Source: Pocillopora damicornis
Taxonomy: Eukaryota
NCBI RefSeq assembly: GCF_003704095.1
Contig: NW_020844865.1
Span: forward strand, 62,001-126,000
Direction: 5' to 3'
Length of the DNA stretch: 64,000 nt
The translations under genes were made by a program, and so were the position numbers. The notes under the pieces were generated by a model. That model was not told the DNA's origin, searched no databases, and saw nothing but the letters and a program-made list of their open reading frames with translations. Below, one piece after another: positions 12-6,360 of the stretch (position 1 is its first letter; each line of letters begins with the position of its first letter).

Positions 12-3000
12 CTCAGAAATAAATTTGACATCGGGTATCTGGAAAAATTTACCACCTGTCTTTAGGGAAATTCCTGTGAAAAAGTCGGTCACTAAGTCAT
101 GTGCTGGGTCTGGAATGTATGCTGGCTCTGGCTGGGAGATCACAATAGTATGAAGAGTGACATAATTCTTTGTAAGCTGATGACAGAGCTTCATTACATC
201 ATGGCCATGTTCACACTGAAAATTTTCAAGAGTTTTTCTTTGATCCAATATGGCTACAATAAAATAGATGAAGACAAAATGCTATTAATCATGATTCGTG
301 AATCTTATAAAATTGCAATAATAATCTAGATATTTCTATGTGAAGCCATAAATGAAAGCAGTATCTTCTCATTCATAGCTTTACCACAATCTCAAGGAAG
401 TAATACCCTGAACTTTGCAGCCACAGAGGTTATTAATATATTTATATTAATATATGTAGCAGGTAATTTAGTGTTAACAACGGAGTTGCAAATGTAAATT
501 GGTCAAGGCAAAGTTCTACAACTGTAAGCATTATCTGAGGCAGTGAGTTCCCATAGCTTTTCTTGTAATTCTTTACAAATGACTTTATTTATACTCACGC
601 AGTAATATGCAGACTTTGATGGCATTTTTGCGACACTTTAAGTTGTTACTATCGCCGCCAACTTCACTGAGTTGGACTGCTAGTGCCAGTCCATCTGCCA
701 GCCCTCTTGTTCCACCTGGCCTCCCAAGGCGACGCAGGCTTTCTATGGTTTCTTTCATAATATCCTTTCTGTCTGTAAATTTCTGTATGAGTGCTGTGTT
801 ATTGATTCGAGGATCACCAGATCGCATTCCAGGGCGTGGATGCCTTTGATGGTTTTGGTAACTGATGAGTGCCAGTCTGAGATGGAAATTGTCAAAAATA
901 TCATTGATCAGGTGCCTCAGTTGAGTCTTCAGACGTCCTAACAGCACTGGATTTGATAAAGCACAGTCAACGACTAGAATCAGGTCCAGGTTGTTTTCAT
1001 TGTGATTGCAATCTGCATGTGTAGCAAAGAAAACAGAAAAAAATTGAAACACATTCACAAAACAGAACAGCATATCAAAATGCATAGAACATTCTTTCCA
1101 ATTTTGTTCACAAGTCTGTATATCAGCTGTAAATAGGAAGAGATGGCAAAGAAAGGAAACATCAAGGAAAAAGTTACTGCTAGATTTTTTTTATAGTCTA
1201 GTTATTTCCTTCTGATTTCTCCTCATAATTTCATTAAATTGTCAAGGTGAGAGGTGATGAGGAAAAACTCATTAAAGCAACAACTAGGCACCTTGACCTG
1301 ACACCAAATTCTTGGGACTAGAACAAGAACAACTGTAAGAACTGTGTGATTGACTAAGCAATTGATAATAGGACCTTGAAAGTGAAATGGGTTAATATCA
1401 AAACGACAAATCTAAATGACTAATTGTACTTGGGCTACAAAAATGTCACCCTATTCAAAAACACATTTTACCGACAGTAATCGACAGGAGAATTTTTGAT
1501 ATCCCTCCATACATCTCTATACCTGTTATGCTGAGAAGAATATTGCTTGGAAAAAATTTAACTCTAACCTTGACTCAAAATGAGTCAATGTTGATTCACA
1601 TCATTTACTAACTTACAGTAAGACTACATATTAAATATCTTATGCAAACATATATTCTTGACTGAAATTTTTTTAATCCTCAAAAGGATTCAAACACCAC
1701 AGCCTGTTCCAATTTTGCAGTTAGATGCTTGAAGTCAAAGCCCAACACTTTGCTTTGATTTATGAACATGAGCATCTATGGTACTTTTCCCTATTATCAT
1801 TACTTCCTCATATCCAAAGTTTATCATCTTTTACTTTCAATTGACATATTAAGTAATTAATTGTGATGACTATTTTGTGGGTTCATTTTTATAAGTTAAC
1901 ATCCACACTGTTACAAGCACTCACCTGGAGTGATTAAAGAGAGTGAGCGTGTAATTGGCTGCAATAGAATTTGAGATTCATTGCCAATTCTCACTGCTTT
2001 GACCCCACAATGGTTAAGCCAAGGAAGTTTGTGAATGGCAGCCCATCGAAGGCTGTCTACCATTTCCTTCCTATTGGGGATTTTAAAATTTAAATTCCAC
2101 CAATTGACTCCCACTTACTCACTTCCTTCCAGGTATATTTCTGAGGGATCAAAACCCAGAAATGCATTCATGCTGTGCACAAGGTTTTGCTGCACATTGA
2201 CATCTGCTTGCATACCAAAAGAGAAGCAGACCAGCTCCACAGCTGCAGAAGTAACAAATAAAATTTATCTTTGGTAGAATGGACTTTTTGTTAGTACATC
2301 AACAACAAATGACTCCTGTCAACCCTCTCTTACCCTCTCCTACTTGCACCTTGAACTGACTAGATCTAATTCAATCATGTTACCCTGAATCTAATATAAT
2401 TGTCATGCATTTCCTGCACTTAGCACACCCTCAGTACCTTGAATCCTTCAAAACTTTTTTTCATTTATTTAAAATATAATAGTGCTAGCTGTCCCCCAAA
2501 ACAATGGGGTCATGTTTCCAGGGGCTGGGATACATTGAACTGCAGTTCACTGATTATCTTCATAGAGTTTAGCTGTTTAACACCTTTTTCTCCAGATTGT
2601 TCCACTTTGACTGAGCTTCTCAACATCACAATAAACTTTGATTTAAATGTGCAATTGGCGTGATCAGAAATACTGGTCGATTAGTGTTAACAACCATAAA
2701 TAAATTTACACTATTTCAAATCTAATGCACAGGTCAACAAAAACCAGCCACTTCATTCCACAGACGGGTATTCAATATCCCTGGGCTCTGAGCTCAGAAT
2801 TAACTAAACCATTGAAGAGCAAGCAACTATCATTACATTAAATTTTAACCAGAGAATTCCCTCTTTTCAGCTTTACGAACTGTTCTGCTTTATTCAGTGA
2901 TGGACTAAGTTTGCACTGTTCATAGTTAACCATAGTTATGATGACGTACCAATGGCAAAATTTCTGGCAATGGCTTTTGAAATTTTATAACTCCACAGTT

Positions 3001-3968
3001 TTCTTATTCTTGCCACCATTTGCTACCCCCCTATTCAAGGTCAGAGCAGTTGGAGGAGTCATTTGAGGTGGACCTAATCTTGCTAGTTTGGGTAACACTC
3101 ACATGTTGCTGAATGGAAAATTTCCCAAAGGAACATGTCTGGATCACAACAGAAGCTCTCAGTCCTATGGTAGTTGTTTTCTAGCCCTTATAAAGAGGTT
3201 TCTGCTCTGCCAGTGGTGCAGTATTCACCGTTAAGAGTTGATCAATTCGAGCTTCAACATCCCCCTCCCCAAGCATCAGGTAATTTGACTGTCATCCTTG
3301 CCCTGGGGTGAAGAATTTTAATCTTGTCTGGATGGGATGGGAAGTGTCAAGTCTTCTCCGCGGAATAAACACGTTCACCATCAAATCTGGCATTTGGGTA
3401 GGGCATTTGAACACAATTTTGGCCCCAGTTTGGGGACGGGAATTTGAACAAACCAATCTGCAAAATTTCAAATGCCCAAGAGGGGGAGGGCGCGTTGACG
3501 CTTCGAATTGATCGACGTATAACACTGGTTTTATCTTGGGGCACTTATATCAATGAATTGAGTCCTTGATCTTATAATATTAAAAAATCAACCATTTGTA
3601 TATCGGCATTATTCTAATTACAAAGAAAAATGAAGAAAATCCAATGCTGTCACATTACCTGGTGATTCACTCTGTCTATAAGCTCTTACACGTTTCACAA
3701 GATCGAGCCTTTTAACGTCCTTTAGAAGTTTCTCAAGGTTGTCTAAGTTGTCCTCTCCCAAGAGACCCTGTTGTAACATTTTTGAAAACAAATCTCTTGG
3801 TTTGCTACACTTCTCCAGATGTCCTGACGGGATGGATCCCTGCAGTATAAATTTCAAGCCTTGTAACTGGTCTTCCTCGATTTCTTGAGACAGTCGCTCC
3901 AAGAATCTTCGAAACTTGTTCAGTATGATTCCTCCGCTCACAACAACCCGAGAATCGCCATGAGCCAT
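12..3968 (-). CDS. DED + TRADD-N-like + von Willebrand A domain protein, 3'-partial (continues off window start); in-frame TAA in exon 2
   Basis: Exons 3968-3659, 2242-1925, 1012-599 and 253-12 all have GT-AG boundaries with consistent phases (1,1,1,0). Exon 1 is DED-like (FRRFLERLSQEI..DQLQGLKFILQGSIP...LE...PRDLF..MLQQGLLGEDNLDNLEKLLKDVKRLDL, RxDL motif). Exons 3-4 are vWA-like (LDLILVVDCALS..RLALISYQNH..FT..KVCILL..C.HGHD..VTLHTI..DFFTGISLKTGGKF). TAA at 2117-2115. Confidence 0.75.
457..506 (-). repeat. Degenerate fragment of the Penelope-type repeat at 24610-24742 (lacks the ribozyme part)
   Basis: tagcaggtaatttagtgttaacaacggagttgcaaatgtaaattggtcaa aligns to 24641-24690 with about 42/50 identities by manual count. 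Confidence 0.7.
1200..1395. mobile_element. Degenerate copy of the TTAA-flanked MITE family (see 53678 and 57401)
   Basis: Internal motifs (tttctcc..ataat, ggtgatgag, caccaaattct) and the end ...gtgaaatgggttaa resemble the copy at 57401-57612. Confidence 0.45.
3231..3522. mobile_element. MITE with ~40-bp imperfect terminal inverted repeats (PIF/Harbinger-like), in intron 1 of the DED gene
   Basis: The left end ttaagagttgatcaattcgagcttcaacatccccctcccc matches the reverse complement of the right end ttatacgtcgatcaattcgaagcgtcaacgcgccctccccct. The ends are TTA/TAA. Confidence 0.75.
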
Positions 3969-4272
3969 GAGTGCGAGCCATCAACCAAGTAAAGTCGTCT
4001 GAATGTTGCCTTCATCCAGTTTTCAGGTTCATATCATGCTGCAAATTCACGAATCAACAGAACTTCCATCGTCTTTGGCGGAAGGAGCTGTTAACCTGTT
4101 TCGCATGACAACGCTAAAGAGTTTATTTGAATGTTGATAACCTTATGTGACGCATATTCCGAACCTCATACCCAGGGTCTTTGTTCAAAGGTCGCCCCGT
4201 CCTAAGGGACCGACAACAGATACATGCCCATCGATGTCCACCGCCCTTTAGCCTTCACATCCACTTCCTTCA

Positions 4273-4372
4273 NNNNNNNNNNNNNNNNNNNNNNNNNNNN
4301 NNNNNNNNNNNNNNNNNNNNNNNNNNNNNNNNNNNNNNNNNNNNNNNNNNNNNNNNNNNNNNNNNNNNNNNN
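4273..4372. other. Assembly gap (100 N, size probably unknown)
   Basis: Run of exactly 100 N. Confidence 0.99.
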
Positions 4373-4422
4373 CCATCCTGTTCATCATCTGATTGTCTTC
4401 TGGAGCCCCCACCAGGAGCCAT
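4373..4422 (-). CDS. First coding exon fragment of an unidentified gene (MAPGGGSRRQSDDEQD...), truncated by the gap
   Basis: Strong acceptor ctcttttttttag followed by attggaggatcATG and an open frame into the gap. A matching upstream donor (CTG|gtgagt) lies at 6361/6360. Confidence 0.5.
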
Positions 4423-6360
4423 GATCCTCCAATCTAAAAAAAGAGAGTGACTTAACATTACATTCTACAAGTTATTATGGACAAGATTCAGCAAGTTATA
4501 ACACACCCCTACAGTCTCCAAAAATGAAAAAAAAAATGCCTTTTCCAGCTAGCAAGAAGAGAGAAAATTTTAAAAATAAATTATGTACAAGTAGTCATTA
4601 TGAAATGTGCTCAATAGCAAAAAAAAAAATGTTATTTTATTACTGACTCAGAGTTAATTTATATCTATGTCAAGCATCTAGAATTCTGCAAGAACACAAA
4701 CCATTCAGAAGAAGGCAAAACAATTTTATGTAGTCAGTTTCCCAAGGCAACCACAGTATCTGATATCTAAGTCAATATTTACAGAAGGTATTCTTTGTGA
4801 CATTTTTTTAAAAGTATTATTATTCTCATAGTACAAGAAAGTATTGGACTTCAAAAGCTGTTGCTTAAAGAAAATCTAAACAAAATTTGTTACCTAAACT
4901 CAAATATGCACCAGAATCAAGCAATCACCATGTGATTGTCACTCGTCACACTAGCAATTTTCATGGAAAATTTCTTCATCATTTACAACATTTATTATTT
5001 CTGTGACTGAATCTACACTACCAAATGAAAGCACTTAAAAATCACTGCTTCTTAAAAAATATTCACATTTGAATTCTTTTAAGTATAAGAAATCAAAAGC
5101 AAAAAAAACAGTCACAATCTTTTACATGGCAAAAAAGAAACAATTAATTCATAGAACAAATACCTCTGTTTGAATCAAGTATTACTTTCAAGTCTATAAA
5201 AGTTTTCAGTTGTACAATGCTTGTTGGTCCGGTATCCCTATACTGTTTATTAAACTGATTAATCTGCCGTTTATTAATCCTTCAAGTCTAATATTAGATT
5301 TGACATTTCTAAAATTAGAACAAGACAATGAAAGCTTTTATTCCACACTATCAATGATACTTGCCCACAATGGATTTTTATGAGTCATATTCTATCATTT
5401 TCAAATAATTAGCTCATCAGATGTGTTTCTTAAAATAACCCCCTCCTCCAGTAACACTTAGTCCAATGCGATACCCATAACTGCCCCACTCTACATGAAT
5501 GGGAATCAACAACAACAGCGATGCCAGTCAACGAATTCAGACTTCCTGGAACAATCTGTTTTGTTTTAGTTTTGAAAGACTATCACATGGAAAACAGCCA
5601 AGTTTTAATTCGCATCTTTAACCTTTCAATTGATAAACAAATAAATAGATTATTTTTAATTTTCATAGTCGAAAATTAAGTGGGCACGGTTCGTATAGTA
5701 TTGTCGACACAACTTAAGCGTCTCGATGAAAAACATAACTTCTGTTTTGAATTTTTTGGCCCAACCGATACTAAAAATTGATATGTACTTTACTACAAGA
5801 AAATATACCAACAGTTTGAGCACCAACACAAGTTATTTGCGAATAAAATGTATGTGAAATGAAACAGACATCAAACCCAGCTAAACTTGGGCTTATTTCT
5901 TACTACAACGAGAGAAAGCATGTTCGATGCTCAAATCTTTCTTACGCAACTTCGACTTGAATTTATCACTATTCGTTAGTATCTTGACACGGTTTGTACC
6001 TCAGACAACTTGATTTTTTTTTTACTTCCACAGGAGTAAGAGACCAAAAAGAGTTTAACGTACTAGACTAAGTCCCTTTCAAACATTCCAGCAAATTTCA
6101 CTAAGGGAGTCGCGTGCCGTTTACAGCCGCAGAAAAATACAAATTCATCTCGGGTTACAGCGTTGTAAAAACATAAAAGAACAACTGTTGGAAAGATTCC
6201 TGTCGAAACCTTGACAGAGGGCTATTCTCAAAAAATTTTCAATCAATTCTTCAACGATCAAAATATCTTGTCACGTTTGGACATAGCGATCAATAAAATA
6301 AGAAAACCTTTCGGGAAGAAAAAGACTTTCCGATAAATTTTATGCGTTCGATCTACTCAC

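What the first reader, a model, noticed from the sequence alone, without database searches (positions are those of the whole stretch)
12..3968. Unusual death-effector-domain + TRADD-N-like + pseudo-MIDAS vWA protein: a candidate new immune/apoptosis adaptor
Seen in sequence: phase-1 introns separate an N-terminal DED exon, a ~105-aa alpha/beta module exon (..IYLEGSE*VGVNWWNLNFKIP...LRWAAIHKLPWL..CGVKAVRIG..) and the vWA exons, which is an exon-shuffling signature. Established: characterised DED proteins (FADD, caspase-8/10, cFLIP, PEA15, DEDD) do not carry vWA domains. Death-like, TRADD-N and vWA domains co-occur in prokaryotic ternary conflict systems, and death-fold proteins are expanded in corals. 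Inference: the middle module is TRADD-N-like, and the protein couples a vWA sensor or scaffold to DED-mediated caspase-8/FADD recruitment.
Basis: partly seen in the sequence, partly recalled or inferred. Interest (0 to 1): 0.78.

Follow-up and report, generated by a model that had tools for sequence, protein, structure and literature searches.

The report
Coral DED–TRADD-N–vWA gene, already described
This is a real coral (Pocillopora damicornis) gene for a protein with a death-effector domain, a TRADD-N-like domain and a metal-site-less vWA domain. That architecture was already catalogued in cnidarians in 2021, and the copy in this window carries a premature stop codon and sits in a patchy part of the assembly.

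Summary
The exon structure is real. The minus strand holds E1 3968-3659 (DED, Pfam 1.4e-22), E2 2242-1925 (a 106-codon alpha/beta module), E3 1012-599 and E4 253-12 (vWA). A fifth exon lies about 8 kb outside the window. Introns 1-3 are phase 1. An assembled transcript from a public run joins all five exons at exactly these borders, at 97-99.6% identity.

AlphaFold2 and Foldseek confirm a vWA fold, and the MIDAS metal site is degenerate. The middle module folds as beta-alpha-beta-beta-alpha-beta. It matches the coral's own NCOA6 TRADD-N segment in hhalign (score 38.5; 200 shuffles reach at most 18.8).

The architecture is not new. Kaur et al. [quoted passage not shown] One of them is the Stylophora protein XP_022785642.1, which belongs to this family (its 90%-identity cluster representative is 81% identical to the P. 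verrucosa orthologue). No functional study was found.

The window copy has an in-frame TAA at 2117-2115, where all relatives have CAA. It lies in a gap-bounded scaffold block that interrupts the neighbouring Bcl-2 gene, so it is probably a divergent haplotig rather than a tandem duplicate. The GenBank model pdam_00019537 fuses both copies with Bcl-2.

Verdict: domain calls supported, novelty claim not, function still inferred.

The parts
3659..3968 (-). Exon 1: start codon and death effector domain (codons 1-103 plus 1 base). RxDL motif at R87-L88-D89-L90; F40-I41 at the position of the FADD/caspase-8 hydrophobic patch.
   Evidence: Pfam PF01335 E 1.4e-22. The family profile hits caspase-8 DEDs at 1.7e-19 and FADD at 1.7e-11 in PDB sequences. 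Transcript L023 1-336 aligns to window 3994-3659.
3969..3994 (-). 5' untranslated bases covered by the related transcript contig.
   Evidence: blastn of L023 against the contig.
1925..2242 (-). Exon 2 (phase 1-1, 318 nt): TRADD-N-like (NCOA6-clade) alpha/beta module, beta-alpha-beta-beta-alpha-beta.
   Evidence: AF2 of the intact sister copy: pLDDT 84.6, pTM 0.76. hhalign against the coral NCOA6 PF13820 segment: prob 78%, score 38.5, against a shuffle maximum of 18.8. The orthologue XP_022785642.1 is listed as DED+TRADDN-NCOA6+vWA.
2115..2117 (-). In-frame TAA in beta-strand 2 of the module (codon 145). Every relative has CAA (Gln) here. The same C-to-T difference creates a GTAAGT donor, which the GenBank model uses to skip 48 nt.
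599..1012 (-). Exon 3 (phase 1-1, 414 nt): first part of the vWA domain, with the degenerate MIDAS loop D-C-A-L-S after strand beta1.
   Evidence: Alignment A1; AF2 and Foldseek; weak Pfam VWA hit for the sister copy, E 0.048.
12..253 (-). Exon 4 (phase 1-0, 242 nt): second part of the vWA domain. It begins with the near-invariant Pro that replaces the MIDAS Asp after strand beta4.
4273..4372 (.). 100-N assembly gap that forms the upstream edge of the block carrying this gene copy.
4373..4421 (-). First ~16 codons of the neighbouring Bcl-2-family gene, cut off by the gap. The complete exon is found again 14 kb away at C1500:52543-52034.

Best explanation
The window holds exons 1-4 of a five-exon, 578-codon Pocillopora damicornis gene. 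It is part of GenBank model pdam_00019537 (RMX60113.1). The gene belongs to the cnidarian DED + TRADD-N (NCOA6 clade) + vWA + conserved C-terminal helical region family. Shown here: the domain order, the splice structure, transcription of an intact near-identical allele or orthologue, purifying selection, and loss of the vWA metal site. Inferred: the protein is a cytosolic adaptor or scaffold. In this model, the FADD-like DED (RxDL motif and hydrophobic patch kept) would dock it onto DED assemblies such as FADD/caspase-8. The MIDAS-less vWA and the C-terminal helices would bind a partner or signal in a metal-independent way. The TRADD-N module at the junction would act as the interaction or switch surface, as Kaur et al. 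propose for this class. The copy in this window carries a premature TAA in the TRADD-N exon. As assembled, it is therefore a null allele or young pseudogene, or else a base error. It is most likely a divergent haplotype that was scaffolded as a second tandem copy.
For: DED: Pfam E 1.4e-22; PDB profile hits to caspase-8, FADD, PEA-15 and cFLIP. Gene model. Family: about 23 scleractinian proteins with the same layout, from Acropora, Montipora, Pocillopora, Stylophora, Oculina and Porites, plus a second five-exon locus in this genome at C2478:221330-225547. vWA fold: 225 Foldseek PDB hits at E<=1e-3, and all those listed in the top 50 are vWA-superfamily domains. TRADD-N: beta-alpha-beta-beta-alpha-beta model; ACT and ferredoxin-like structural neighbours; hhalign against the NCOA6 segment that itself passes PF13820's cut-off, with z = 13 against 200 shuffles; PF13820 hits at E 0.01 and 0.09 in two relatives, the one located (P0060) at the right place. 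Literature: PMC8195603 section 10 and supplement 18 part 77, with XP_022785642.1 in the family cluster. Constraint: dN/dS 0.14-0.41 between the two copies. Stop codon: every relative has Gln at that site. Haplotig reading: the block C1500:53626-66272 is bounded by N gaps and splits Bcl-2 exon 1; P. verrucosa and P. meandrina assemblies have one gene between Bcl-2 and the next gene; the A-type transcript's 3' UTR continues into the sequence downstream of copy B.
Against: No Pfam TRADD-N model reaches its threshold on this gene. TRADD-N itself is not among the 50 entries listed in either structure search. The hhalign match covers only the C-terminal half of the module (45 columns). No experiment on any family member was found, so the adaptor mechanism is inference. 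P. verrucosa RefSeq lists two consecutively numbered loci, LOC131769083 (B-type) and LOC131769084 (A-type), which would fit a real tandem duplication. Read-level evidence could not be obtained.
Confidence: 0.75

Rival explanations
1. The TAA is a sequencing or assembly base error, and the window copy is an intact, expressed gene.
For: A transcript contig 98.8% identical in exon 2 reads CAA at that site. The rest of the copy shows purifying selection and no other lesion. The region is a patchwork of short contigs in a short-read assembly.
Against: The base stands in the deposited assembly, and the annotators had to work around it. No reads could be examined.
Confidence: 0.35
2. Copies A (window) and B (18 kb away) are true tandem paralogues, not haplotypes.
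For: They are about 90% identical in DNA, with dS 0.08-0.20 against about 1% flank divergence between Pocillopora species. Both types occur in P. verrucosa under consecutive locus numbers. Oculina has two adjacent family genes.
Against: Block A is bounded by gaps and sits inside Bcl-2 exon 1. Only one exon 5 and one 3' UTR are assembled. Two other Pocillopora assemblies show a single gene at this locus, one A-type and one mosaic.
Confidence: 0.3
3. The protein is a decoy inhibitor of DED signalling, like cFLIP or PEA-15, rather than a recruiting adaptor. It would cap or sequester FADD/caspase-8 DED filaments.
For: It has one DED and no enzymatic effector domain. It sits next to a Bcl-2-family gene in three Pocillopora genomes.
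Against: Nothing tested here separates activation from inhibition. The conserved TRADD-N, vWA and C-terminal regions suggest further partners beyond simple capping.
Confidence: 0.3
4. The middle module is merely a generic ferredoxin/ACT-like domain that is unrelated by descent to TRADD-N.
Against: The hhalign score against a bona fide NCOA6 TRADD-N segment is 13 sd above shuffles. Two independent weak PF13820 hits were found, the one located (P0060) at the right place. Iterative profile searches were published for the orthologue.
Confidence: 0.12

Closest known systems
[quoted passage not shown] 2021 (e.g. Stylophora XP_022785642.1 and XP_022799237.1, Orbicella XP_020605636.1, Nematostella XP_001635271.1, Exaiptasia XP_020914592.1)
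   Same: Same domain order, same length class (about 580-600 aa) and same conserved C-terminal region. XP_022785642.1 lies in a 90% cluster whose representative is 81% identical to the P. verrucosa orthologue.
   Different: This copy has a premature TAA. Its GenBank model is a three-gene fusion, and it was not found in the stored (truncated) part of the paper's table. The family has only been described computationally.
Vertebrate TRADD (TRADD-N + death domain)
   Same: An RRM-like alpha/beta adaptor domain sits next to a death-fold domain in an apoptosis/immunity adaptor.
   Different: The order is reversed and the death-fold member is different (DED, not DD). There is an added vWA. No PF09034 match was found. 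TRAF2-MATH binding was not tested. The conserved turn Ser is only questionably present.
FADD, caspase-8, cFLIP and PEA-15 DEDs
   Same: The DED matches at E 1e-19 to 1e-9. The RxDL motif and the helix-2 hydrophobic pair are kept.
   Different: There is a single DED followed by TRADD-N and vWA, with no DD, caspase or pseudo-caspase domain.
NCOA6 N-terminal TRADD-N domain (PF13820) and DEDD2/FLAME-3
   Same: The module aligns to the coral NCOA6 beta3-alpha2-beta4 segment at 36% identity over 45 columns. According to Kaur et al., DEDD2 also pairs a DED with a TRADD-N.
   Different: NCOA6 is a large nuclear coactivator without a DED or vWA. The match here is below Pfam's threshold.
Bacterial vWA-MoxR ternary conflict systems with death-like/TRADD-N adaptor domains
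   Same: Death-like, TRADD-N and vWA modules co-occur (PMC8195603).
   Different: Here all three are on one eukaryotic polypeptide. No MoxR partner is seen, no PADLOC or NCBIfam model matches, and the MIDAS site is lost.

Membership tests
Death effector domain (PF01335) | Profile match above Pfam's gathering score over the whole six-helix domain | tested here: met
   80.2 bits against a cut-off of 35.9, profile positions 1-81 of 82.
Death effector domain (PF01335) | RxDL motif in helix 6 and a hydrophobic pair on helix 2 (definition from established knowledge of FADD and caspase-8) | tested here: met
   R87-L88-D89-L90 and K39-F40-I41. R87, D89, L90 and K39 are 90% or more conserved in the family. 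They align with caspase-8 DED2 'FKFLL'.
TRADD-N superfamily, NCOA6 clade (PF13820) | Two-layer RRM-like beta-alpha-beta-beta-alpha-beta fold with a four-stranded sheet | tested here: met
   AF2 model: E2-9, H15-29, E37-45, E48-55, H59-70, E81-86, pLDDT 84.6. Neighbours are ACT, S6 and ferredoxin-like domains.
TRADD-N superfamily, NCOA6 clade (PF13820) | Pfam profile match above the gathering score | tested here: not met
   No hit for this gene or its sister copy. Two relatives reach only E 0.01 and E 0.09 (13 bits for the latter, against a cut-off of 22.5). PF09034 finds nothing in the genome.
TRADD-N superfamily, NCOA6 clade (PF13820) | Profile-level similarity to a bona fide member | tested here: met
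   hhalign of the family profile against the coral NCOA6 segment that passes PF13820: prob 78%, E 1.8e-5, 45 columns. 200 shuffles give mean 12.6, sd 2.0, max 18.8, against 38.5 for the real segment. Only the C-terminal half of the module is covered.
TRADD-N superfamily, NCOA6 clade (PF13820) | Conserved 'uS' (tiny residue then Ser, sometimes Cys) in the beta2-beta3 turn (Kaur et al. 2021) | tested here: inconclusive
   G40-S41 is present in Pocillopora, Stylophora and Oculina. The position is Cys in Montipora, Porites and others, and Trp in Acropora. It lies about 5 residues before the turn in the AF2 model.
TRADD-N superfamily, NCOA6 clade (PF13820) | Binding of a partner (e.g. TRAF MATH) through the exposed sheet | not testable with these tools
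   Needs binding assays.
von Willebrand factor A domain | Rossmann-like vWA fold | tested here: met
   Foldseek on the full-length orthologue model: integrin beta-I E 1.3e-6, NorD VWA, TFIIH p44 and Cav alpha2delta; 225 hits at E<=1e-3.
von Willebrand factor A domain | Pfam VWA-type profile above the gathering score | tested here: not met
   Best results are PF00092 at E 0.0019 (18.9 bits, cut-off 23.8) and Med25_VWA at E 0.00067 (19.8 bits, cut-off 21), both in relatives. The sister copy's exon 3 gives E 0.048.
von Willebrand factor A domain | MIDAS metal site: DxSxS after beta1, plus Thr and Asp from later loops | tested here: not met
The loop is D-C-A-x-x, with Ala invariant at the first Ser and the second Ser variable (S, T, R or G). 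Pro347 follows beta4 where the Asp should be.

The most novel reading that the evidence does not exclude
The A-type and B-type sequences may be two ancient allelic lineages of a single locus. They would be kept across Pocillopora species by balancing selection and shuffled by recombination. The supporting observations are: dS about 0.15 against about 1% species divergence; both types in P. damicornis and P. verrucosa; an A-type single gene in P. meandrina; and a mosaic in a second P. verrucosa assembly. The sequenced P. damicornis colony would also carry a null A allele. That would make this DED-TRADD-N-vWA gene a hyper-polymorphic immune or allorecognition-type locus in a reef-building coral.
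Probability: 0.2. Interest if true: 0.55.

Novelty: already known. Interest (0 to 1): 0.28.

Why it matters
The family links a caspase-8/FADD-type recruitment domain to a TRADD-N module and a vWA domain, in animals where death-fold signalling is greatly expanded. It is a reasonable candidate for coral innate-immune or bleaching-related cell-death signalling, and nobody has tested it. This scan adds no new kind of protein, because the architecture is in the 2021 eLife catalogue. What is useful here is mostly curation. The GenBank model pdam_00019537 is a fusion of two copies with a Bcl-2 gene and skips 16 codons around a stop. The locus is mis-scaffolded. The two copies are deeply divergent yet both constrained, which is worth a population-level look.

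Tried and rejected
1. A death-domain-like exon 1.7 kb downstream of exon 4 (L009:8296-8054; Pfam Death E 8e-4) looked like a C-terminus. I rejected it. It lies in a gap-bounded 6-kb contig piece with no counterpart in the P. verrucosa locus, and no orthologue or transcript contains it.

3. ESM Atlas on the module gave only sub-0.9 bacterial hypothetical clusters.

4. The PDB sequence-profile search found only DEDs.

5. PADLOC and NCBIfam gave nothing.

6. Word-indexed protein searches did not reach outside Scleractinia. The sea-anemone members cited come from the paper, not from my searches.

7. BLASTP of the module against the NCOA6 segment found nothing. Only the profile comparison did.

Full-length work used database orthologues by id (P0036, P0017 and others) and exon-by-exon references.

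Full report
**Where the window comes from.** The window is G000:C1500:62001-126000 of a 234-Mb, 4393-contig assembly. That protein aligns to the window's exons at up to 100% identity. The flanks are 99% identical to P. verrucosa GCA_036669915.2. The genome is therefore P. damicornis GCA_003704095.1.

**Gene structure.** On the minus strand I read four exons with canonical splice sites:
- E1 3968-3659
- E2 2242-1925
- E3 1012-599
- E4 253-12

Introns 1-3 are phase 1 and intron 4 is phase 0. The gene runs off the window. Its last exon, 150 codons ending QRRF-stop with acceptor TTTTGATAG|GTT, is at C1500:54184-53732.

Two independent sources reproduce every border. One is tblastn with the P. verrucosa protein XP_066027018.1 (P0036, 580 aa). 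The other is an intron-less 3778-nt Logan contig from run ERR9592245 (L023). It carries a continuous 581-codon frame and aligns to E1-E5 at 99.4, 98.8, 99.0, 99.6 and 97.3%. The DED and vWA exons are therefore in one mRNA.

**Domains.**
- *DED.* E1 is a death effector domain (PF01335, 80 bits, E 1.4e-22). The family profile hits caspase-8, FADD, PEA-15 and cFLIP DEDs in the PDB. R87-x-D89-L90 and the K-F-[IL] pair on helix 2 are conserved.
- *vWA.* I predicted the structure of the full-length P. verrucosa orthologue from a 17-sequence alignment (mean pLDDT 69.8; the vWA core is mostly 80-90). Foldseek against the PDB gave 225 hits at E<=1e-3. Those listed in the top 50 are all vWA-superfamily domains: integrin beta-I 1.3e-6, NorD, TFIIH p44 and Cav alpha2delta. 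Pfam VWA models stay below threshold.
- *MIDAS site.* The loop after beta1 is D-C-A-x-x, with Ala invariant where the first Ser should be. A near-invariant Pro follows beta4 where the Asp should be. The site is degenerate, so "pseudo-MIDAS" is right.
- *C-terminal region.* A conserved, mostly helical region follows the vWA (residues about 422-531). The 2021 paper calls it "C-ter".

**The middle module.** The window copy's exon 2 is broken by a stop, so I worked with the intact sister copy (L010:3634-3951, minus strand).
- Pfam finds nothing.
- A full HMMER scan of 1.84 billion representatives finds only 21 proteins. Nearly all are coral exon fragments; one is a 568-aa DED protein.
- AF2 with 28 sequences gives a confident model (pLDDT 84.6, pTM 0.76) with beta-alpha-beta-beta-alpha-beta topology.

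Structure alone therefore says "RRM-like" and no more. Sequence evidence is more specific:
- PF13820 (NCOA6_TRADD-N) finds one above-threshold segment in this genome, at C464:716366-716569.
- The module profile aligns to that segment in hhalign with probability 78%, E 1.8e-5 and 36% identity over 45 columns, covering beta3-alpha2-beta4.
- 200 composition-preserving shuffles score 12.6 +/- 2.0 (maximum 18.8), against 38.5 for the real segment.
- Two family members also touch PF13820 at E 0.01 and E 0.09; the latter (P0060) does so within the module.

**Literature.** Kaur, Iyer, Burroughs and Aravind (eLife 2021, PMC8195603) state that cnidarians have up to four NCOA6-clade TRADD-N proteins. [quoted passage not shown] Their Figure 4-source data 1 lists "DED+TRADDN-NCOA6+vWA" and "...+vWA+C-ter" proteins from Stylophora, Orbicella, Nematostella and Exaiptasia. 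One of them, XP_022785642.1, is a member of the cluster of P0039, which is 81% identical to the P. verrucosa orthologue of this gene. The architecture and the TRADD-N assignment are therefore already published, computationally. I found no paper naming these loci and no functional study.

**The stop codon.** The window copy has TAA at 2117-2115. This is codon 145, inside beta2 of the module. The sister copy, three Pocillopora proteins of the same (A) type, the transcript contig, and Stylophora all have CAA (Gln) there. The same C/T difference turns GCAAGT into a consensus GTAAGT donor. The GenBank model uses that donor with a downstream AG to skip 48 nt (16 codons, essentially strand beta3), giving "...EGSE|KEMVD...". 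Such a skip would gut the domain. There is no other lesion. dN/dS between the two copies is 0.14-0.41 per exon, with dS 0.08-0.20. The copy is therefore not an old pseudogene. The stop is either recent or an error.

**Assembly context.** A 90%-identical copy B lies at C1500:41818-47885. Comparison with the P. verrucosa locus (PEX3, Bcl-2, DED gene, TMEM183; one copy) shows the following:
- Block A (C1500:53626-66272) is bounded by 100-N gaps on both sides and contains two more gaps.
- Block A is placed inside exon 1 of the Bcl-2 gene, whose first ~16 codons appear on both sides of it.
- One of its inner pieces (6 kb, carrying a stray death-domain-like exon) has no counterpart in P. verrucosa.
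- Only one exon 5 and one 3' UTR are assembled, and the A-type transcript's 3' UTR continues downstream of copy B.

P. meandrina also has a single gene at this locus, of A type. On the other hand, P. verrucosa RefSeq has consecutive loci of B and A type. I favour divergent haplotypes scaffolded in tandem (about 0.6) over true paralogues (about 0.3). The GenBank model pdam_00019537 (1214 aa) runs copy A, Bcl-2 and copy B together.

**Mechanism.** What is shown: a cytosolic-looking protein (judged by eye; no signal peptide or membrane segment is evident in the sequence) with a FADD-like DED, a TRADD-N-type module, a metal-site-less vWA and a conserved helical tail. It is conserved under purifying selection across complex and robust corals, and it is transcribed. 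What is inferred: the DED docks it to DED assemblies (FADD/caspase-8). The vWA and C-terminal part bind a partner independently of metal. The TRADD-N at the junction serves as a switch or interaction surface, as Kaur et al. propose. A decoy role like cFLIP or PEA-15 is equally compatible with the data. The conserved adjacency to a Bcl-2-family gene is noted but proves nothing.

**Verdict.** The domain interpretation is supported. The novelty claim is not supported. This particular copy is defective or mis-assembled. Interest is low to moderate.

Noticed in passing
window 4373-4458, and G000:C1500:52034-52543 (L009:34-543): A Bcl-2-family gene (PF00452, E 5e-13) lies directly upstream of the DED gene on the same strand, as in P. 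verrucosa and P. meandrina. In this scaffold its first ~16 codons are duplicated on either side of the inserted block.
   Followed up: partly
G000:C1500:60054-60296 (L009:8054-8296, minus strand): An 80-codon death-domain-like exon ending in a stop (Pfam Death E 8e-4, below threshold). It sits in a gap-bounded 6-kb contig piece that has no counterpart in the P. verrucosa locus, so it is probably a misplaced fragment of another gene.
   Followed up: partly
window 457-513: A 57-bp element in intron 3 recurs at 82-94% identity on more than 40 contigs. It often appears as nearby inverted pairs, which looks like the terminal repeat of a MITE.
   Followed up: no
window 3236-3515: Intron 1 holds a pair of inverted repeats (...gatcaattcgagcttcaac... 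/ ...gacgcttcgaattgatcgacg...) about 240 bp apart. The sister copy also has a related element in this intron. It is probably another small transposon.
   Followed up: no
G000:C2478:221330-225547 (+): A second member of the family in this genome, with the same five-exon layout. It is 52-62% identical to Oculina XP_078346074.1.
   Followed up: partly
L018:22332-22643 (P. meandrina): A further DED exon, 75% identical to exon 1, lies 6.5 kb downstream of the P. meandrina gene and just upstream of a Roc-COR gene. This may be a DED-Roc-COR architecture.
   Followed up: no
family alignment A1 (residue numbers of P0036): The vWA domain carries invariant or near-invariant Cys and His residues (C227 in the former MIDAS loop, H265, C343, C360, H364, C370). 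These might form a different metal or disulfide site.
   Followed up: no
GenBank RMX60113.1 (P0062), spanning C1500:42391-65968: The deposited 1214-aa gene model fuses copy A, the Bcl-2 gene and copy B, and skips 16 codons around the stop. It needs re-annotation.
   Followed up: yes
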